Sequence record: PV745554.1
Strand: one strand, 5' to 3'
DNA: 64,000 bases
Below the pieces are notes generated by a model. It was not told where the DNA came from. It worked only from the letters and a program-made list of their open reading frames with translations, and did not search any database. The stretch's first letter is position 1, and every line of letters starts with the position of its first letter. The position numbers and the translations under genes were made by a program. Below, one piece after another: positions 39,328 through 53,957 of this stretch.

Positions 39328-40018
39328 AGAGAAGCTCCGGTTTGGCGCTGACGGGCTTGGACCAGTCCCAGACGAACCACGCGTAGGCGAAGCGCGGTGC
39401 GCCCTTGGTCCCCTCGATCCAGCGGGGGCGATGGCGAAGGGTGACCTTCGCGGCGAAGGCGGGGTGATCGAAGAGGTCGGCGCGCGAGCGCGCGGCGTCC
39501 CATTCGTGGCGGCAGAGGAAGGCGACGAAGCCCTTGTCGGCTTCCATCAGCTTCAGGGCATGACGGGCGGCGCGCTCGGCGTCCTTGCCGTAAGGCGGAT
39601 TGGAGATGATGGCGTCCGGGCGCGCCGGCAGCGGGGTGACCTTGCGCTCCTTGCCCTCGTCGTCGAGGACCACCGCCGGCCGGGCCTTCAGCGCGCCCAG
39701 GCGATCCAGGTCGTCCGGGGTGAGCTTGAAGAAGTCCTCGACCGCGTCCACGTCGAAGCCTTCGTAGCGACGGATGTCCGTGGAAAGGACCTCCTGCACG
39801 TAGGGCCGCAGCGGGTTGGCGATCGCGCCGTTGCCCGCGAAGGGCTCCCAGGCATAGAAGCCGGCGAACTCGTCGCCCATGGCCTCGATCAGCGCGTCGA
39901 ACGCGGGACGAGGCGTCGGATAGAAATCCAAGGGGTTCCTGGCATAGCCCGAGGCGCCCAGCATGGAGGGGTCTTTGCGACCGGCATCGGAGAGAGACAT
40001 GGCCAGGAGGGATGTCAT
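39317..40018 (-). CDS. Amino (likely N6-adenine) DNA methyltransferase
   Basis: DFYPTP, WEPFAGNG (motif I), ISNPPY (motif IV). Confidence 0.85.
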   Translation of the reverse strand: MTSLLAMSLSDAGRKDPSMLGASGYARNPLDFYPTPRPAFDALIEAMGDEFAGFYAWEPFAGNGAIANPLRPYVQEVLSTDIRRYEGFDVDAVEDFFKLTPDDLDRLGALKARPAVVLDDEGKERKVTPLPARPDAIISNPPYGKDAERAARHALKLMEADKGFVAFLCRHEWDAARSRADLFDHPAFAAKVTLRHRPRWIEGTKGAPRFAYAWFVWDWSKPVSAKPELLYAG

Positions 40019-40031
40019 GGTTAACGAAGGG

Positions 40032-40077
40032 TGTCAAGATTCACGACATTGACTGTCGTGACGCACCACGCTACACA
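40032..40077. promoter_or_regulatory. Divergent promoters: motif on - (40032-40048) and TTGACT-N17-TACACA on + (40049-40077)
   Basis: Back-to-back CACGACA/TGTCGTG half-sites; + promoter faces a non-coding region. Confidence 0.7.
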
Positions 40078-40083
40078 CCCTCG

Positions 40084-40767
40084 ACGAGGCGGTCTCCTGC
40101 TCCTAGCGCGCGCTCTCCAGCCTTTCCGAGGGCGATGCGCCGGACCTGCTGAGCAAGGGAATCCAGAGCGAGGCAGCGCTCTGCTCCCCAAAGAGTGGGC
40201 CAAGCGGTGCGGGCGGAAAGGCTCGGGGTCCGTGGCTCCATGCAATGCGCAGGAGAGACCGTGCTCCTTCTGACGCAGCGGGCGCCCGACGTTGCGGGTC
40301 GTGAGGCGAGGCCGGCCGAGATGATCAACGGCCTGGGGCGGGAGGGGCTTGACCTCTCCCGCATCCGCCTCTAGCGTCACCATCAATCAGGCGCAGCACT
40401 GCCTCACGATCGGACCATGTTCGGCTCCCGGTCCTGGAGCTTGGAAGCCTCACTCTGGAGCAGGACTGCCGCTGCGCCGGGGACGGTTTGGACGACGCAC
40501 CCGTCCATGAGGCGAACGCCGGCCAAGACATGGCACGAGGCGTGACGGGGACCAGAGGTCCCACTCCATTCGCCGCGCCGGCGGCAGCAAAGCTCATTGA
40601 GCGGATGGTGGCACGGGCGCGAGCCCGATTTTGAGAGCCAGCGGAGAGCCACCTTCCTCCCTGGCCCGGCGACGACGAAAGCTGGGTGGCTGTAACCGCT
40701 CGTCTGAGGGATGCGTCCCCAAGATCATCAAGACGCAAAAGGCCCCGATCTCGCGATCGGGGCCTTT
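40084..40767 (+). ncRNA. Candidate large (~680 nt) structured ncRNA
   Basis: Promoter, terminator, no credible ORF, many long-range helices including a crossing pair. Confidence 0.65.
40737..40767. terminator. Bidirectional intrinsic terminator
   Basis: AAAA-GGCCCCGATC-TCGC-GATCGGGGCC-TTT. Confidence 0.88.
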
Positions 40768-40774
40768 CAAATTC

Positions 40775-40863
40775 TGGAGCTACGGGAGGGACTCGAACCC
40801 TCATAGGTGTCGCCACCAGCAGAGATTTGCAGTCCCGCGCCTAACCTCTCGGACCACCGTAGC
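40775..40863 (-). tRNA. tRNA-Cys(GCA) with long variable arm, encoded CCA
   Basis: GCUACGG/CCGUAGC acceptor, U73, CU-GCA-AA loop, GGUG-GCGA-CACC arm, GAGGG-UUCGAGU-CCCUC. Confidence 0.9.
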
Positions 40864-41110
40864 AAAACGGGACTGACGCCCGAAGGCCCAGCCCCGTTCC
40901 CGACGACCCAAGGGAGTGCCGTAGCTGTCCCAAGGAGCACCGTGACGGCGTGGCAGGCGACTGAAGCCGTCAAGTCGAAGGGCTTCCGGCGCCGGTCACC
41001 CTAACCTCCGGGCTCTTGCGAGCGCGAGTGAGGTCCTCCTACGCCGATCCTTATAGCCGAGCCTTCACGCGTCCGCAACGAAAAATGTGTCGTGAGCGAT
41101 GACTTTTTCC

Positions 41111-41140
41111 TTGACACCTTCGATTAGGCTCTGGTAGAGA
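41111..41140 (+). promoter_or_regulatory. tmRNA operon promoter (TTGACA ... TAGAGA)
   Basis: -35 at 41111-41116; partial motif TGTCGTGAG just upstream. Confidence 0.6.
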
Positions 41141-41144
41141 ACAG

Positions 41145-41530
41145 GCATCGTTGTAATTCGGACAACGGAAACGGCGGCAAGACGGGGGTGCGATTCCCCC
41201 CGCCTCCACCACCACGAGCCCCTGGCGCTGGGAGTACGCGACTCCTGGGCAGGGAGTGTTACCCTGACGGACCATTGCTGGCCCGAGCCAAAGGTAGCCG
41301 GGGGTTCTTGATGCTGGGGGCGATCAGCTTCGATTGGCGCATGTGACTGGAAGACGCAACGGTGGGTGACCTCCAGGCCAGCTTGCTGGTGATCGGGTCG
41401 AAGCAACAGAAATGTCGCTGCAAATGACAACGCTCCGTTCGCGGTGCGTGAAGCCATCGCCGCCTAATAAGCGGTAGAGGCGTGTCCCGGCGGACGCGCG
41501 TGTCACAAAAAGGCCCTGCATCTACGGACC
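41145..41530 (+). ncRNA. ssrA: Two-piece (circularly permuted) tmRNA; tag ANDNAPFAVREAIAA; outer ends approximate
   Basis: Acceptor piece ending CGCCUCC-A-CCA (41201-41211) precedes 5' GGGGGCG (41316); G3.U70; tag ORF 41420-41470 ending TAA TAA. Confidence 0.92.
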
Positions 41531-41728: not shown

Positions 41729-41986
41729 GGACCTGAACGCCGAGGGACTCCCAAAGAACGACGGCGTGACACGCTCGGAGAGAACGAGCACTGCAATCCG
41801 GGCTATGAGACCGTGATGTAGCGGACGCCGAAGCGAGAGCAGGCGTGACACCTGGAGAGACGGGACCAGTTTTCCAGGCCGCATGCCCGGCGCACAAGAC
41901 CGCAGGCTTCGGCCGTAGGGCAGTGTCAGGGGATGAGGCTAGTCCCCGGCCCAAGGGCTAGGGCATGCGGCTTGGAAAGCTGGTTT

Positions 41987-42114: not shown

Positions 42115-42131
42115 TGTCGTGAATCTTGACA
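42115..42131 (+). promoter_or_regulatory. Motif TGTCGTGAATCTTGACA
   Basis: Perfect copy upstream of cadherin-repeat gene. Confidence 0.75.
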
Positions 42132-42182: not shown

Positions 42183-42530
42183 GTGGCTCGATCCACCCGT
42201 TCCGTCGCGTTGGCGCGCGTCGTCACGCCCGCGCAACTGAAGCGCGACATCCGTATTCGCCGTGCTGACGAACTGGCTGGGCCGAGCGGCCCCAATGGCG
42301 TGGTCCTGATCGGGATCACCAACGACCGCGTCATGGAAAACAGCGCACCCGGCACGCCCGTGGGCGACATCTTCACGATCCCGGCCGGCGCCGACATCGA
42401 ACTGGTCACCACCGGCGGCAATCGCTTCGACCTCGTCGGCTCGACCCTGGTCGTGGGCTCCACGCCCCTGGACCACGAGGCCACGCTGACGAACTGGCTG
42501 GGCCGAGCGGCCCCAATGGCGTGGTCCTGA
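42183..42530 (+). pseudogene. N-terminal fragment of the cadherin-repeat protein, truncated by the duplication frameshift
   Basis: AGGAG RBS before GTG 42183; frame broken at the repeat junction. Confidence 0.7.
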
Positions 42531-42707
42531 TCGGGATCACCAACGACCGCGTCATGGAAAACAGCGCACCCGGCACGCCCGTGGGCGACATCTTCACGAT
42601 CCCGGCCGGCGCCGACATCGAACTGGTCACCACCGGCGGCAATCGCTTCGACCTCGTCGGCTCGACCCTGGTCGTGGGCTCCACGCCCCTGGACCACGAG
42701 GCCACGC
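42264..42707 (+). repeat. Perfect 221-bp direct tandem duplication
   Basis: GCTGACGAACTGG... starts at 42264 and 42485; identity to 42707; 221 is not a multiple of 3. Confidence 0.95.
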
Positions 42708-50189: not shown

Positions 50190-51812
50190 TTACTTGTTGG
50201 CGAACGCCGCGACGTAGGCCTTGGCGTAGGCTTCCTTGTAGAGCGGGCCGACGTCGTCGTTGTTCTCGTCTTCGAGGTCGGTGAAGTTCGAGTAGTGCTC
50301 GCCCTTCTCGGCGTCGAGGTCGAACGTCTCGGCGTACTCGCCCTCCAGGCGCCCGTCGCGGTCGCCCGCCAGCTTGGCCCAGGCCGCGTAGTGGTGGACG
50401 AGGACCTCCTCGAACGCTTCCTCATAGAGGTACGAGTAGGTGCCCACGCCCTTGTCGGCGCTGGCGCTGTTGTCGAGCGCCGATTCAGCCACCACGTCCA
50501 GGCGCTCGCCTTCGGGGCCTTCGCCCTCGACGAGGTCGACCAGGGCCTGGAGGCGCACGCCTTCGTCGGTCTGGCTCATCGCCTGGGCGATCAGCTTCTC
50601 GGCGTCCTCGCGGCCCCAGGACTTGGCCATGGTCGTGGCCAGATCGTGGTCGACGGCGGCAAAGCCGTTGGCGTCGTAGGCGGGGGTCTCGTCGGTCGAG
50701 GCGGTCTCTTCGACCTTCTCGTCCGAGGCGTCGTCAGTGGCGGCGGCCGAGAAGCCGACGCCATAGCCCTTGACATAGCCCTCCGAGTACGCCTGCCGGG
50801 CCGAGTCGGGGCCGTCGGTGAGTTCGCCCGGCAGATCGAAAGACGCGTCGTACTCGTAGCCGTTGTCCTGGTCGGCCGCACCCGCCTTCAGGCCAGCGTC
50901 GTGGCCGATCTTGGCCCAGTCGGTCGCCTCGGCTTCGACCACCGCTTCGGGGGCCTCGGTGGTGATCACGCCGTCGGCGGCCGTGGCGTCGGTCTCGATC
51001 TCGGGATCGACCTGGGCCTGGGCGTCAGCCTGGGCGGCCTTCTCCTCGGCGTAGCGGCGCTCGACGGCGGCGGTGAAGTAGTTGACCGCGTCGGCCTCGG
51101 GGATTTCGCCCAGGACCTTCATCTCGCAGCAGCGCAGCTTGGTGAGGTTGTAGTCGGTCGGGATCGCCGTGACGTCCTTGGGGTTGATCTCGACGATGAT
51201 GATCTTGCCCCGGCCGCCGTGGAACGAGCGCAGGTAGTCGAACGAGCAGGCGTGCAGGCCGCGCGAACAGGTCTGGTTGCGGTTCGGGTCACAGAGGTCG
51301 CGATCCATCGAGACCGTGCTGCCGATCTTGTACTCGACGGTGTGTGAGTGCAGGTCGAAGTAGTCCTCGCCCACGCGCTTGAAGGCATGGAACATGCCGT
51401 CCGGCGTCAGCGGGTTGCGACCCTTCTCCAGGAAGGCGTAGAGATCGGCGGCGATCGACTTGTCGGGGTTCTGGTCGACATTGGCGATGAAGTTGGTCAG
51501 CGGCTCCATGTCGAAGCCTTCCGCCAGCACGCGCTTGAAGGTGCCGGCCGCCACGTAGTCGACGACCTTGCCGTCCAGGCGCAGGCGGTCGCGATCGTCC
51601 AGGATGACGCGGCCGAACGAGTGGGCCGCCACATAGGCCGCCACGTCGGCGATCAGCCGGATTTCGTCGATGTCCTGCGGGACCTTCTTGACGGCCTCTT
51701 CCAGCTTCTTGCCCTGCGACGAGCCGCGAGGGAAGGAGCGGTAGCGCCCGTCCAGGGTGATCGAGATCGCGTCGACGGTGATCGTCACGGCGACCTTCGC
51801 TTGGGTAGTCAT
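50190..51812 (-). CDS. rIIB: rIIB-like protein with acidic C-terminal extension
   Basis: LYAFLE..PLTPDG.F.AFK.V..D..D.HS, CSRGLH, VTAIP.DY..KLRCC. Confidence 0.85.
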   Translation of the reverse strand: MTTQAKVAVTITVDAISITLDGRYRSFPRGSSQGKKLEEAVKKVPQDIDEIRLIADVAAYVAAHSFGRVILDDRDRLRLDGKVVDYVAAGTFKRVLAEGFDMEPLTNFIANVDQNPDKSIAADLYAFLEKGRNPLTPDGMFHAFKRVGEDYFDLHSHTVEYKIGSTVSMDRDLCDPNRNQTCSRGLHACSFDYLRSFHGGRGKIIIVEINPKDVTAIPTDYNLTKLRCCEMKVLGEIPEADAVNYFTAAVERRYAEEKAAQADAQAQVDPEIETDATAADGVITTEAPEAVVEAEATDWAKIGHDAGLKAGAADQDNGYEYDASFDLPGELTDGPDSARQAYSEGYVKGYGVGFSAAATDDASDEKVEETASTDETPAYDANGFAAVDHDLATTMAKSWGREDAEKLIAQAMSQTDEGVRLQALVDLVEGEGPEGERLDVVAESALDNSASADKGVGTYSYLYEEAFEEVLVHHYAAWAKLAGDRDGRLEGEYAETFDLDAEKGEHYSNFTDLEDENNDDVGPLYKEAYAKAYVAAFANK

Positions 51813-51833
51813 GGGAGACTCCTTGCTCGCGGC

Positions 51834-53957
51834 CTAGTAGCTGCCGAACTTCAGGGTGAGAGGGATGGTGCGAATCAGCGCTTCCAGGGCCTTGGTGCAG
51901 GCGGTGACCTGCTCGGTCGAGGTCGCGTGGTTCGTGTTGTCGAGGAACTTGCGGATCGGGTGGTTGGACGTGGCGTTCAGCTTGGTATGACCCTCCTCGA
52001 ACGTCTTGGTCAGTTCCGAGCGCGGCGGCGCCTTGAACTGCCCGTCCACCTCGTAGAGCGCCTTGATGAAGGAGCGCTCGCGCTCGGTCCACTCGACGAG
52101 GCCGGCGGCCAGCAGCGGCTTGACCGCGCCGAAGTAGGCCGCGACCGACGACTTCATCCGCGTCAGGCGGTCGAAATCGGCCGGGCACTTCTCGATCGCC
52201 CGGTTGTAGAAGCCGTAGGCCGTCGACGAGGTCGACAGCTTCTGCACCGCCACCACGCAGTCATCCAGGCTGACCTTGTGCTTGGCCTGGATCGCCGCGT
52301 CGATCGCCTCGCGCATGGTCGGGACCTTGGCGTCCTCGACGTGCTTCTGGGCGGTGGGCGAGGCGATGTAGATGTGCTTGATGCCGTACTTGTTGGCGAC
52401 GACGAAGACGTCCTCGGCCTTCTTGCGGTACTGGTCCGACGACACCCAGGCCACGGTCCCGGCAGGGAAGGTCTCCACGCCGGTCACCGCCATCTGCTCG
52501 CCCGCGCGCTTGGCCAGGGCCAGACCCCGGATCGGCGGCACATAGGCGGGCGCGTCCTTGCTGACCTTGTCGCGGCGCGGGACCTCGCCCTTGAGCGTGG
52601 CCACGTCGATGTCCTCGAACTTGGCGGTCGGCAGGGCGCAGTTCCAGAAGGCCTTGTCCCGGTCGTAGCCGAGCATGAAGACCCCGTCCTTCAGGTTCTT
52701 GCTCTCCAGGTAGAGGCGCAGGATGCGCGCAAGGCGGCGCGTCTCGCTCTGGGAGAACTCGCGCTTGGTCGAGTCGTCGCGCGACGGGTCGAGCAGGTCG
52801 GAGATGTCGCGCAGGACCAGGAAGTGGGTTTCGGCCTTCTGGCTCAGGTCGAGCGTGTTCTCGATCCGGTAGCCCCAGCGCTCGCGGTGCTGGTCGAACG
52901 AGGCCTTGTAGAGGCAGGCCACGCCAGGGAAGGAGATCGTCGTGCTTTCCAGGCCCGTGGCCGGGTGCTTGGGCTTGCTGCTGATGAACGGCGGGCGCAG
53001 CTTGTTGTGGGTCGCGAAGAACTCGGTGACCGACTGGATGTCCTTGATCTTGACCCAGATCGCCGCCTCGACGTCTTGGCTGATCGTGCCGATGATGTCT
53101 TGCAGGGCCTTGACCGCTTCGGGCTTGTACTGGATTTCTTCCCGCGACGGGATGGGCTCGACCGTGCCCATCGGCACCGTGATCAGCCACTTGCGGCCGT
53201 TGTCGTGGGGCAGGCTCAGACCGCCCTTGGCGGCCAGCGGGTAGATGGCGCAGCCCTGGCGCACGTTCCACGTCGCCGGCAGGGCCGAGTTCTCGTAGGC
53301 GGCCCAGGTGCCGTCGGCGGCTTCGAACTGCGGCATGCCCAGCGGCTGGCCCAGGTCGATGTTGCTGTCGTACATGGGGATGAAGCCCATGGCGACGTTC
53401 TTGACGGCGCGCTCGAAGGAGGCGAAGTCGGTGGGGTTGACCGCGACGGTGACGCGCACGCCGGCCGGCTCGGAGCAGTCCTCGGTGCCCTGGAGCATGA
53501 CGCGCGGCACGCCGCCCTTGCCGATCGCGGCGGTGTAGTGGCGCACGACGTCGCCGTCGTAGCAGGACAGGGCGAATTGGGAGGTGTAGGCGAACGGGCT
53601 CTTGGAGCCCAGGCCGAAGGCGCCGGTGAGATCGTCGGTCTCGTCCTTGTCCGACTCGAACAGGGTCGAGTAGAGGTGCATGACCTTGGCGTGGTCCATG
53701 CCGGGGCCGTAGTCGCGCACGTAGAATTCGGGGCGCATTTCGCTGGGGACGTGGACGAAGAAGCTGCCGGGGTAGCCGGCGACGATATGGGCGTCCTGGG
53801 CGTTCGAGCAGATTTCCCGCACCAGCGAGCCGATCTTGTCCGAGTAGAGCCCGTCGATCAGCATCCGGAACGCTTTGCCAGACGCCTTGATCTTGAACTC
53901 TTGCTCCTCCTGAACGCCGATGGTTTCGAGGAAGACCGGTTCGGTTGCAAGCCGCAT
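51834..53957 (-). CDS. rIIA: rIIA-like protein (GHKL ATPase-like N-terminus)
   Basis: LYSDKIGSLVREICSNAQDAH, VRDYGPGM, GAFGLGSKSPFAYT; adjacent to rIIB. Confidence 0.88.
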   Translation of the reverse strand: MRLATEPVFLETIGVQEEQEFKIKASGKAFRMLIDGLYSDKIGSLVREICSNAQDAHIVAGYPGSFFVHVPSEMRPEFYVRDYGPGMDHAKVMHLYSTLFESDKDETDDLTGAFGLGSKSPFAYTSQFALSCYDGDVVRHYTAAIGKGGVPRVMLQGTEDCSEPAGVRVTVAVNPTDFASFERAVKNVAMGFIPMYDSNIDLGQPLGMPQFEAADGTWAAYENSALPATWNVRQGCAIYPLAAKGGLSLPHDNGRKWLITVPMGTVEPIPSREEIQYKPEAVKALQDIIGTISQDVEAAIWVKIKDIQSVTEFFATHNKLRPPFISSKPKHPATGLESTTISFPGVACLYKASFDQHRERWGYRIENTLDLSQKAETHFLVLRDISDLLDPSRDDSTKREFSQSETRRLARILRLYLESKNLKDGVFMLGYDRDKAFWNCALPTAKFEDIDVATLKGEVPRRDKVSKDAPAYVPPIRGLALAKRAGEQMAVTGVETFPAGTVAWVSSDQYRKKAEDVFVVANKYGIKHIYIASPTAQKHVEDAKVPTMREAIDAAIQAKHKVSLDDCVVAVQKLSTSSTAYGFYNRAIEKCPADFDRLTRMKSSVAAYFGAVKPLLAAGLVEWTERERSFIKALYEVDGQFKAPPRSELTKTFEEGHTKLNATSNHPIRKFLDNTNHATSTEQVTACTKALEALIRTIPLTLKFGSY

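What the first reader, a model, noticed from the sequence alone, without database searches (positions are those of the whole stretch)
40084..40767. ~680-nt ornate non-coding RNA heading the phage RNA island
It lies between a + promoter (40049-40077) and a terminator and has no credible ORF. Hand-found helices: 40090-40100/40249-40261; AGCCTTTCCG 40119-40128/40214-40223 (10 bp perfect); 40164-40183; TGACGC 40271-40276/40374-40379; 40298-40307/40401-40410 (crosses the previous helix, a pseudoknot); 40309-40334; 40338-40362; GGCGCAGC 40390-40397/40471-40478; 40481-40506; CGGGC-GCGA-GCCCG 40614-40627; AGCCACC/GGTGGCT near 40647-40691. Size and tRNA-adjacent phage location recall GOLLD/ROOL-class RNAs (established context), but I cannot match it to any family, so it may be a new class.
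Basis: partly seen in the sequence, partly recalled or inferred. Interest (0 to 1): 0.85.

Follow-up and report, generated by a model that had tools for sequence, protein, structure and literature searches.

The report
Three-module phage noncoding RNA, new family
A roughly 690-base stretch of Caulobacter phage CcrRogue encodes no protein; it is a conserved structured RNA built from three copies of a previously undescribed 60-base two-hairpin module found only in this phage subfamily, and its function is still unknown.

Summary
The window is Caulobacter phage CcrRogue. Window 40084-40767 is non-coding. Annotated minus-strand ORFs differ between relatives. Indels are mostly not multiples of three, and substitutions show no codon periodicity. 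No Rfam family matches, GOLLD and ROOL included.

The region is conserved in all phiCbK-like phages. It lies between an invariant Caulobacter-type promoter and a bidirectional terminator hairpin shared with the convergent tRNA-Cys.

Its core is a repeated module: (C)UGAsGCGA, a 5-bp helix P1 (ACGCC/GGCGU) around a loop holding GGCCRAGA, then GAC, then hairpin P2 with an AGAG-type loop. Rogue has three copies in this RNA (A 40302-40362, B 40508-40562, C 40705-40767) and two more between its tRNA-Met genes.

Thirty-one copies from 11 loci support both helices (90.9% paired versus 75.7% shuffled; 10 of 13 pairs with double changes). All real hits are on the + strand and lie only in the Cys-tmRNA-Met island. 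The module is absent from Rogue's main 20-tRNA cluster.

Best reading: a new multi-module RNA that offers repeated recognition sites to a trans-acting factor. The identity is solid; the mechanism is inferred. phiCbK and BL57 carry a true GOLLD next door, and Rogue has lost it.

The parts
40041..40061 (.). Perfect inverted repeat TCACGACA / TGTCGTGA bracketing the -35 TTGAC; operator-like. TGTCGTGA recurs beside the TTGAC of the tmRNA promoter region (41088-41095) and of the 42126 promoter (42115-42122).
   Evidence: invariant in 7 phages
40049..40077 (+). Promoter-like site: TTGAC (40049-53), spacer, GCTACACA (40070-77). It fits the Caulobacter sigma-73 consensus (from memory) and is not flagged by the generic sigma-70 scan.
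40084..40767 (+). Predicted ~690-nt non-coding transcript. The 5' end is inferred from the promoter; the 3' end is the terminator hairpin.
   Evidence: orthologous promoter-to-terminator unit in Brevundimonas phage Gurke
40119..40223 (+). 5' domain closed by helix b, AGCCUUUCCG (40119-28) / CGGAAAGGCU (40214-23). Compensated in phiCbK-type phages (GCGCCUUCC/GGAAGGCGU). BL57 shows CAUCCaCG/CGcGGAUG by eye, with one mismatch.
40164..40183 (+). Hairpin c: stem CAGAGCG/CGCUCUG with invariant loop AGGCAG (40171-76). The stem covaries: phiCbK has GCCGGCCG/CGGUUGGU with three G-U pairs, which favours the + strand.
40302..40362 (+). Module A (degenerate): box UGAGGCGA 40302-09; P1 AGGCC 40309-13 / GGCCU 40330-34 around GGCCGAGA 40314-21; P2 40338-47 / 40353-62 with invariant loop CUUGA. 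TTGAC at 40349-53 followed by a conserved CTA at about 40371 may also be an internal promoter.
   Evidence: R1 15.6 bits, E 0.09; 30.7 bits with R2, of which it is a training member; P1 compensated in BL10 (GGACU/GGUCC) and BL57 (CGCCCG/CGGGCG)
40390..40403 (+). Small hairpin GGCG-CAGCAC-UGCC with an invariant loop. C-to-U changes keep G-U pairs (phiCbK CGCC, Rogue UGCC, BL57 UGCU).
   Evidence: read by eye
40463..40470 (+). Invariant block GGACUGCC. CUGCC is complementary to GGCAG of the hairpin c loop, so a loop-loop contact is possible. This is untested and both sides are invariant.
   Evidence: inference only
40481..40506 (+). Hairpin i (GGACGG/CCGUCC) immediately 5' of module B. A hairpin sits at this place in phiCbK (GGGC/GCCC) and BL57 (GGAGGG/CCCUCC) but in a shifted register. 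The automated test did not recover it outside Rogue.
40508..40562 (+). Module B (canonical): box UGAGGCGA 40508-15; P1 ACGCC 40516-20 / GGCGU 40539-43 around GGCCAAGA 40521-28; GACG; P2 GGGACC 40548-53 / GGUCCC 40557-62 with loop AGA.
   Evidence: 72-74 bits; 82-92% identical even in Colossus and the Brevundimonas phages
40614..40634 (+). Hairpin j CGGGC-GCGA-GCCCG followed by AUUUUGA; an internal terminator- or attenuator-like site. The stem covaries (CGGGGC/GCCCUG, CGGGGC/GCCUCG). BL57 has GGCC..GGCC followed by UUUUUU.
40635..40666 (+). Conserved hairpin GAGAGCCAG...CCUGGCC (phiCbK GCCAGGGC/GUCCUGGU).
40705..40767 (+). Module C: box UGAGGGA 40705-11; P1 UGCGUC 40712-17 / GACGCA 40732-37 around CCCAAGA 40718-24; AAA. 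P2 is replaced by the 13-bp terminator hairpin 40738-50 / 40755-67, which is shared with the convergent tRNA-Cys. Gurke's third module has the same build.
   Evidence: Recognised by eye and by the Gurke copy (12-26 bits); not scored by the models in Rogue itself.
41729..41791 (+). Module M1, starting right after the CCA of tRNA-Met no. 1: GAACGCC 41735-41 / GGCGUGAC 41763-70, then hairpin CGCUCG-GAGAGAA-CGAGC. Same family, outside the finding's interval.
41805..41883 (+). Module M2 between the two tRNA-Met genes: GCGGACGCC 41821-29 / GGCGUGAC 41842-49.
   Evidence: (21.8 bits, E 0.007; not in the training set)

Best explanation
Shown:
- Window 40084-40767 is a non-coding gene on the + strand.
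- It is conserved across phiCbK-like phages (Dolichocephalovirinae).
- It is bounded by a conserved host-type promoter and a terminator hairpin.
- Its conserved core is three copies of a new ~60-nt RNA module. The module is a near-invariant single-stranded box (C)UGAsGCGA, a 5-bp helix P1 enclosing a loop with GGCCRAGA and ACNA, a GAC linker, and hairpin P2 of 5-7 bp with an AGA or GAGAGRA loop.

Inferred:
- The RNA is made by host RNA polymerase.
- It works as a multivalent RNA. Each module folds on its own and shows the same invariant unpaired nucleotides to one trans-acting partner, a phage or host RNA-binding protein or nuclease.
- One transcript would therefore hold or titrate several partner molecules, as a scaffold or decoy.
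- The extra copies that abut tRNA-Met, and in relatives tRNA-Cys, would be released as small module RNAs when the tRNAs are processed.
- The lineage-specific hairpins between modules would act as spacers or stabilisers.
For: Non-coding:
- Annotated ORFs disagree between phages: 414 nt in Rogue, 573 in phiCbK, 513 in Magneto, none in BL10, and a 129-nt + strand ORF in BL57.
- Their products share only a 10-residue stretch that overlies module B, and none has a Pfam hit.
- Five of 6 indels between Rogue and BL10, and 16 of 18 between Rogue and phiCbK, are not multiples of three. Substitutions are flat over codon positions.

Module:
- Model R1 gives 20 hits at 66-86 bits (its own training copies), then a further 11 hits from 51 down to 12 bits, all on the + strand.
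- R2 recovers copies it was not trained on.
- On 29 distinct copies, 90.9% of cells pair against 75.7% in shuffles. Ten of 13 pairs change on both sides, and 0 of 500 shuffles reach the observed values.
- P1 variants stay complementary: ACGUC/GACGU, AAGCC/GGCUU, AGGCC/GGCCU, GGACU/GGUCC, UGCGUC/GACGCA. By my count at least 18 different P2 stems all pair.
- G-U pairs favour the + strand.

Intrinsic rather than cis role:
- In Rogue, phiCbK and Gurke the three-module unit ends in a terminator and has no downstream gene on its strand.
- The module is absent from Rogue's main cluster of 20 tRNAs and from another 50 kb, so it is not a general tRNA-processing signal.
- There are 5 copies per island in Rogue and Colossus and at least 9 in L015, with about 25 near-invariant positions, many of them unpaired.

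Phage-restricted: exact-pattern scans of metagenomes and 185,579 genomes gave one true extra copy and no cellular copy. A relaxed IMG/VR scan filtered with the model gave none.
Against: - There are no expression data. The phiCbK RNA-seq tables held here were cut before the phage sheet.
- No partner has been identified.
- In relatives some modules sit 2-6 nt upstream of tRNA-Cys or tRNA-Met, or 12-13 nt upstream of start codons with ribosome-binding sites (L015). That placement looks more like a cis-acting leader or a processing site.
- Alignment A2 was fitted to the model, so its pair counts lean towards the structure.
- The copies are paralogues and orthologues, not independent samples.
- Full-length comparison rests on about four lineages, and the RNAalifold covariation term is only -2.95 kcal/mol.
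- A possible internal promoter (40349-77) and an internal terminator-like hairpin (40614-34) could split the region into shorter RNAs.
Confidence: 0.4

Rival explanations
1. The modules are punctuation marks of the island's precursor transcripts. They would be recognition sites for an endoribonuclease, or small self-cleaving ribozymes, that cut the RNA into units (tRNAs, small mRNAs, inter-module RNAs). The 690-nt RNA would then be a precursor of several shorter stable RNAs.
For: - Modules end 2-6 nt before tRNA-Cys (Colossus, L010, L015).
- They start 0-6 nt after the CCA of tRNA-Met no. 1 in all lineages.
- They precede two small ORFs with ribosome-binding sites in L015.
- Size, multiplicity and many invariant unpaired nucleotides are typical of small ribozymes and of nuclease sites.
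- Rogue encodes an RtcB-type ligase, which acts on 2',3'-cyclic phosphate ends.
Against: - No known ribozyme family matches.
- The 20 tRNAs of the main cluster are packed 3-8 nt apart without any module.
- In Rogue, phiCbK and Gurke three modules sit in a unit with nothing downstream to release.
- Cleavage cannot be tested in silico.
Confidence: 0.22
2. One reading: the whole ~690 nt is one large globular 'ornate' RNA of the GOLLD/ROOL kind. It might form RNA-only multimers, with the three modules as pseudo-symmetric building blocks.
For: - Length is kept at 661-689 nt in six phages (743 in BL57), with three modules also in Colossus and Gurke.
- Many hairpins have invariant loops (AGGCAG, CAGCAC, CUUGA). 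GGCAG and CUGCC are complementary loops.
- The + strand has a strong folding z-score.
- It lies in the same island as a true GOLLD in phiCbK.
Against: - There is no GOLLD or ROOL match.
- Long-range helices a, d, e, h and k are not conserved, and the global covariation term is weak.
- Inter-module sequence is unalignable beyond Shapirovirus and Poindextervirus.
- Modules also occur singly elsewhere in the island.
Confidence: 0.15
3. A cis-regulatory leader: a riboswitch-like sensor or a nut/put-like antitermination signal that controls whatever lies downstream.
For: - Some copies sit in 5' leaders of ORFs and tRNAs.
- P2 is replaced by an intrinsic terminator in module C and in Gurke's third copy, as if it were an expression platform.
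- Untranslated operons need protection from Rho (my own knowledge).
Against: - Most P2 hairpins lack a U tract and do not sequester the ribosome-binding site.
- Three copies lie in a unit with no downstream gene.
- A copy placed just before the final terminator argues against processive antitermination.
- There is no match to any riboswitch family.
Confidence: 0.1
4. A DNA-level element: repeated protein-binding sites, promoters, or single-strand hairpin signals of a replication origin in the replication module.
For: - The region lies in the DNA replication module next to helicase genes in Colossus and Gurke.
- The word GTCGTGAC/GGCGTGAC also occurs at three promoters.
- TTGAC follows or lies in P2 in several copies.
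Against: - Compensatory changes keep intramolecular pairing in P1 and P2 while other copies in the same genome keep the consensus.
- G-U pairs occur on one strand only, and all copies share one strand.
- The unit is framed by a promoter and a terminator.
Confidence: 0.06
5. It encodes the annotated minus-strand hypothetical protein (Rogue gp307; phiCbK gp290).
For: GenBank annotations exist. Long open frames are common in 65% G+C DNA.
Against: - Frames, lengths and even the strand of the annotated ORFs differ between phages.
- Frameshifting indels occur between 92%-identical genomes, and there is no codon periodicity.
- The products do not align and have no Pfam hit.
Confidence: 0.02

Closest known systems
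GOLLD RNA (Rfam RF02032)
   Same: A large phage-borne non-coding RNA of unknown function in a tRNA-rich island. A true GOLLD lies in the same island of phiCbK and BL57.
   Different: There is no model match here even at E<=10. It is on the other strand and the other side of tRNA-Cys. It has no embedded tRNA. It is built from a thrice-repeated module, which GOLLD is not.
ROOL RNA (RF03087, accession from memory) and other large 'ornate' RNAs (OLE, raiA, HEARO)
   Same: Several hundred nucleotides long, many hairpins, often phage- or tRNA-associated, function unknown.
   Different: No Rfam match. Comparative support here is for local hairpins and the module, not for a long-range architecture.
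Multi-site sponge RNAs such as CsrB/RsmZ
   Same: One RNA carries several copies of a short hairpin motif with a conserved purine-rich loop. This is the working analogy for the proposed mechanism.
   Different: The loops are AGA or GAGAGRA, not GGA. Each unit is a two-hairpin, ~60-nt module with about 25 near-invariant positions. The units are ~200 nt apart, and the partner is unknown.
Stable small RNAs co-encoded with tRNAs in phage T4 (species 1 and 2 RNAs), and skipping-rope RNA (RF02924)
   Same: Non-tRNA structured RNAs embedded in phage tRNA regions and probably released by tRNA processing. Skipping-rope is present in Rogue's main tRNA cluster.
   Different: Unrelated sequence and structure. 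The module is confined to the Cys-tmRNA-Met island.
Lambda nut / HK022 put antitermination RNAs, and T7 RNase III sites
   Same: Short conserved RNA structures repeated at the heads of, or between, phage transcription units.
   Different: No boxA/boxB or put consensus. The helices are too short for RNase III. One copy directly precedes a terminator.
Type III antitoxin RNAs (ToxI-like repeats)
   Same: Repeated structured RNA units, sometimes copied by phages as decoys.
   Different: The units are not head-to-tail (spacing 190-250 nt) and there is no adjacent toxin gene.

Membership tests
GOLLD (RF02032) | Score at or above the family's gathering threshold (150 bits) with the Rfam covariance model | tested here: not met
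   No hit in the window at gathering or at E<=10 over 39900-41200. The same model scores 165.3 and 169.7 bits in phiCbK and BL57 at a different locus.
GOLLD (RF02032) | Frequently an embedded or adjacent tRNA on the same strand | tested here: not met
   No tRNA lies inside 40084-40767. The adjacent tRNA-Cys is on the opposite strand.
ROOL (RF03087, accession from memory) | Match to the Rfam covariance model | tested here: not met
Known self-cleaving ribozymes (hammerhead, twister, twister-sister, pistol, hatchet, HDV-like, hairpin) | Match to a family model | tested here: not met
   No such hit at E<=10.
Known self-cleaving ribozymes | Site-specific self-cleavage | not testable with these tools
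   Needs in vitro transcription and a cleavage assay.
Protein-coding gene (annotated gp307 / gp290) | Reading frame conserved among orthologues, indels in multiples of three, third-position excess of substitutions | tested here: not met
   5/6, 2/2 and 16/18 indels are not multiples of three, and substitutions are flat; the ORFs disagree between phages.
Protein-coding gene (annotated gp307 / gp290) | Orthologous products align; domain hit | tested here: not met
   BLASTP finds only a 10-residue match at E 0.033. No Pfam hit.
tRNA / tmRNA | ARAGORN or Rfam detection | tested here: not met
   these tools find only the neighbours (tRNA-Cys, permuted tmRNA, two tRNA-Met).
CsrB/RsmZ-type sponge | Many hairpin loops with the GGA motif | tested here: not met
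   P2 loops are AGA or GAGAGRA; GGA occurs in only a few.
CsrB/RsmZ-type sponge | Several copies of one hairpin motif in a single non-coding transcript | tested here: met
   Three modules lie between one promoter and one terminator.
Type III antitoxin repeats | Head-to-tail tandem units next to a toxin ORF | tested here: not met
   Spacing is 206 and 197 nt, and no + strand ORF is adjacent.
Intrinsic terminator (40738-40767) | G+C-rich stem followed by a U run | tested here: inconclusive
   It is a 13-bp stem. The tail is UUUCAAAUU on the + strand and UUUUGCGUCUU on the minus strand. The scan's rule of 5 T in 8 does not flag it. The orthologous hairpin is annotated as a minus-strand terminator in Karma, and its shape matches the terminator end of an Rfam sRNA model.
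New module family (this report) | P1 and P2 kept by compensatory change; boxes GCGAAC / GGCCRAGA / GUGAC; + strand; Cys-tmRNA-Met island of Dolichocephalovirinae | tested here: met

The most novel reading that the evidence does not exclude
The ~60-nt module is a new functional RNA fold in its own right. It could be a new class of self-cleaving ribozyme or a specific aptamer for a host defence or translation factor, used by phiCbK-like phages as part of an RNA 'rescue kit' together with tmRNA, initiator tRNA and an RtcB ligase. Alternatively the three-module RNA assembles into an RNA-only multimer, as GOLLD and ROOL do.
Probability: 0.12. Interest if true: 0.9.

Novelty: new variant of a known kind. 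Interest (0 to 1): 0.62.

Why it matters

This work shows that their Cys-tmRNA-Met island is packed with further RNA genes:
- a permuted tmRNA;
- a GOLLD in some genera;
- a new family built from a covariation-supported module repeated 5 times in Rogue and Colossus and at least 9 times in one metagenomic relative.

The module is short, has about 25 near-invariant positions, and is restricted to one phage subfamily with a tractable laboratory host. That makes an otherwise open question, what large phage tRNA-island RNAs do, directly testable by deletion, pull-down, cleavage assay and structure work.

It also corrects several database annotations of 'hypothetical proteins' that are very probably not genes.

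Tried and rejected
1. Rfam at gathering and at E<=10: nothing in the interval.
2. A pseudoknot between the bases just 5' of UGA and the P1 loop looked plausible in a few copies. It has no support from mutual information over 22 copies.
3. A C/D-box-like or K-turn reading (GUGAUGA about 45 nt upstream of CUGA in Colossus-type copies; tandem G-A next to P1) is seen in too few copies. It stays an idea only.
4. Modules as sigma-73 promoters: GUGACGG resembles the -35 element, but no -10 element follows at the right distance (by eye).
5. tRNA-like reading (5-bp stem, linker, 5-bp stem with a 7-nt loop, sometimes ACUCCA after P2): suggestive, but ARAGORN and the tRNA model see nothing.
6. Exact-pattern scans: the five genome hits and two of the three metagenome hits are chance matches in coding DNA. 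The 78 new loci listed from a relaxed IMG/VR scan were chance by the model, apart from one 32-bit hit that looks coding.
7. phiCbK infection RNA-seq (PMC10688885): the phage expression sheet is not in the stored text.
8. The XRE/TgrL motif as the operator at 40041-61: the matrix could be read only in part and starts differently. I dropped this line.
9. Gapless repeat finding does not recover the module because its copies differ by indels.
10. Global RNAalifold gives a weak covariation term and mis-pairs module B.
Full report
**Identity of the window.** The interval 40030-40775 is 100% identical to Caulobacter phage CcrRogue (NC_019408, 101427-102172). It has homologues in 32 phage records, all Caulobacter or Brevundimonas phages of the Dolichocephalovirinae. 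Local order in Rogue is: DNA transfer protein and DNA methyltransferase genes (minus strand), the interval in question, tRNA-Cys (minus, 40775-40863), a permuted two-piece tmRNA (plus, 41149-41467, RF04321, 88.5 bits), and two tRNA-Met genes (plus).

**Check of the observation.**
- TTGAC (40049-53) and GCTACACA (40070-77) lie in a 60-bp block that is invariant or nearly so in Rogue, BL10, phiCbK, Karma, Magneto, Swift and BL57.
- That block fits the Caulobacter sigma-73 consensus as I remember it. The generic sigma-70 scan does not flag it, and it does not flag the 13-bp hairpin at 40738-40767 as a terminator either.
- Karma's annotators called the orthologous hairpin a minus-strand terminator. 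It probably serves both convergent units.
- The + strand folds at -355.5 kcal/mol, z -6.8 against 20 shuffles. The minus strand gives z -3.6.

**Coding or not.**
- GenBank annotates a minus-strand 'hypothetical protein' here, but it differs from phage to phage: 414 nt in Rogue, 573 in phiCbK, 582 in Karma, 513 in Magneto and Swift, nothing in BL10, and a 129-nt plus-strand ORF in BL57.
- The Rogue and phiCbK products share only ten residues, which overlie the most conserved DNA. There is no Pfam hit.
- Between Rogue and BL10, whose regions are 92% identical, 5 of 6 indels are not multiples of three. The figure is 2 of 2 between phiCbK and Magneto, and 16 of 18 between Rogue and phiCbK.
- Substitutions are evenly spread over the three codon positions.
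- The region is therefore not protein-coding.

**Known RNA families.**
- No Rfam family matches the interval at the curated thresholds or at E<=10. The only matches are to the terminator hairpin shape.
- The same search on relatives finds a genuine GOLLD RNA with an embedded tRNA-Gly in phiCbK (L002 4037-4523, minus, 165.3 bits) and BL57 (169.7 bits), between tRNA-Cys and the tmRNA.
- Rogue has replaced that 1.15-kb segment with 215 unrelated bases and has no GOLLD.

**The repeated module.**
- In the homologue alignment one 58-nt stretch (40508-40565) stands out. It is 82-92% identical even in CcrColossus and in the Brevundimonas phages Gurke and Kikimora, where nothing else aligns.
- It recurs within each genome.
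- Its consensus is (C)UGAsGCGA - ACGCC - GGCCRAGA N~8 ACNA - GGCGU - GAC(G) - hairpin.
- A covariance model of 19 copies (R1) finds 31 copies at E<=1 in 11 loci, all on the + strand.
- A second model (R2) finds further copies that were not in its training set, including window 41805-41883.
- On 29 distinct copies, 90.9% of cells form pairs against 75.7% after shuffling. Ten of 13 pairs show changes on both sides. No shuffle of 500 reaches the observed values, and sliding the partners drops pairing to 28-51%.
- P1 is mostly invariant, but every variant is compensated: ACGUC/GACGU twice, AAGCC/GGCUU, AGGCC/GGCCU, GGACU/GGUCC, CGCCCG/CGGGCG, UGCGUC/GACGCA.
- By my count, P2 has at least 18 different stems, all complementary.
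- Caveats: A2 was aligned to the model, the copies are related, and E-values from the shortened calibration are rough.

**Copies in the window.**
- Module B: 40508-40562, 72-74 bits.
- Module A: 40302-40362, degenerate; 15.6 bits with R1. P2 has an invariant CUUGA loop.
- Module C: 40705-40767, recognised by eye. Its P2 is the terminator hairpin, exactly as in Gurke's third copy.
- Module M1: 41729-41791, starting right after the CCA of tRNA-Met no. 1.
- Module M2: 41805-41883.

**The rest of the 690 nt.**
- Kept only with a register shift seen by eye: the hairpin just 5' of module B (helix i).
- Not kept: a, d, e, h and k. Helices d, e and h fail already in BL10, so the proposed pseudoknot is unsupported.
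- Hairpin j is followed by a U-rich run in all lineages and may be an internal terminator.
- TTGAC in the module A loop, with a conserved CTA at a fixed spacing in all lineages, may be an internal promoter. Neither point can be settled without transcript mapping.

**Is it one gene?**
- The three-module layout with 190-255-nt spacing recurs in Colossus (L008 3776, 4001, 4256), in the 308-kb phage of L012, and in Gurke (3809, 4001, 4247).
- In Gurke the unit begins just after an upstream terminator and a TTGACA-N17-GTAAAT site. It ends in a terminator formed by the third module, has no long ORF, and is separated from tRNA-Cys by an opposite-strand gene.
- In Colossus-type phages the third module instead ends 5 nt before a + strand tRNA-Cys.

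**Distribution.**
- The module is absent from Rogue's main cluster of 20 tRNAs and from a further 50 kb.
- It is absent from the rest of the 64-kb window, apart from chance-level hits.
- It is absent from cellular genomes, and metagenomes add a single true copy.
- It is therefore specific to the Cys-tmRNA-Met island of this phage subfamily. It is not a general tRNA-processing signal.

**Mechanism.**
- Shown: a conserved, non-coding, + strand element with a repeated two-hairpin module that carries many invariant unpaired bases.
- Inferred: such a pattern means recognition by one specific partner or a catalytic or ligand pocket.
- Three copies sit in a unit with nothing downstream on its strand, and the module is missing from the other tRNAs. 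For these reasons I favour an intrinsic, trans-acting role: a multivalent scaffold or decoy, with the tRNA-flanking copies released by tRNA processing. Confidence is about 0.4.
- The main rival is punctuation or self-cleavage. It is supported by the tight juxtaposition to tRNA ends, by copies in front of two small ORFs in the metagenomic contig L015, and by the phage's RtcB ligase.
- A single ornate fold or assembly, a cis-regulatory leader, a DNA-level element and a protein gene follow in decreasing order.

**Comparison and novelty.** It works most like multi-site RNAs such as CsrB, and sits where GOLLD, ROOL, skipping-rope and the T4 stable RNAs sit. It fails the membership test of every family I could test. 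The 2012 genome paper reported no functional RNA other than tRNAs, and I found no later description. I rate it a new variant of a known kind: a large phage tRNA-island RNA with a new, well-supported module. Interest is moderate to high because the host-phage pair is a laboratory model.

**Limits.** There are no expression data, only about four independent full-length lineages, and rough E-values. Several structural statements were read by eye and are marked as such in the parts list.

Noticed in passing
L002 4037-4523 (phiCbK, minus) and L007 4242-4728 (BL57, minus); window 40932-41146 is the replaced segment: A genuine GOLLD RNA (RF02032, 165-170 bits) with an embedded tRNA-Gly lies between tRNA-Cys and the tmRNA in phiCbK and BL57. 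Rogue lacks the whole 1.15-kb segment. BL10's annotation shows no tRNA there either, but I did not scan BL10 with Rfam.
   Followed up: partly
window 41149-41467 (+): A permuted (two-piece, alphaproteobacterial type) tmRNA gene that is not annotated in the GenBank record. ARAGORN misses it in the window but finds it in BL57, L010 and L015.
   Followed up: partly
window 40041-40061; 41088-41095; 42115-42122: A perfect inverted repeat TCACGACA/TGTCGTGA brackets the -35 TTGAC of the RNA's promoter. The half-site TGTCGTGA recurs next to the TTGAC of two further promoter-like sites in the island. It may be an operator of an unknown regulator.
   Followed up: partly
window 40017-40024 (minus strand) and 40032-40037: TTAACCAT, the CtrA half-site word, overlaps the longest-ORF start of the methyltransferase gene. 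A minus-strand TTGACA lies just upstream. The whole 40017-40080 block is a conserved divergent promoter region.
   Followed up: no
window 41729-41986: The spacer between the two tRNA-Met genes is a conserved structured RNA in all lineages: two modules separated by a hairpin (AUCCGGGCUAUGAGACCG... in Rogue).
   Followed up: partly
L015 1336-2130: In a metagenomic relative, two modules sit 12-13 nt upstream of the start codons of small ORFs (56 and 97 codons) that have ribosome-binding sites. This is the only case of modules heading protein genes.
   Followed up: no
L015 2930-2995: A T-arm plus acceptor-like end (GUGGGUUCGAUCCCCAC...CCUCCA) lies downstream of a module. Neither ARAGORN nor Rfam calls it a tRNA. 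It may be a tRNA fragment or an acceptor-piece-like RNA.
   Followed up: no
L145 4703-4799 (NC_019408 48702-48798), outside the window: A skipping-rope RNA (RF02924, 45.8 bits) lies in Rogue's main tRNA cluster. That cluster also has unannotated gaps of 0.2-1.1 kb (for example 50827-51957).
   Followed up: no
L143 14380-15612 (NC_019408 139379-140611), outside the window: Rogue encodes an RtcB-type 'tRNA splicing ligase'. Together with the tmRNA and the initiator tRNA, this suggests an RNA repair or rescue repertoire.
   Followed up: no
window 42342-42358 and 42563-42579 (minus): Two identical terminator-like hits lie 221 bp apart. They reflect a direct repeat at the start of the cadherin-like repeat protein gene, where two overlapping ORF calls share sequence.
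   Followed up: no
window 40255-40307: Ungapped repeats link 40255-76 to the sequence just 5' of module M2 (41807-28), and link the promoter hairpin (40044-64) to 40287-40307. There may be a fourth, very degenerate module just 5' of module A.
   Followed up: no
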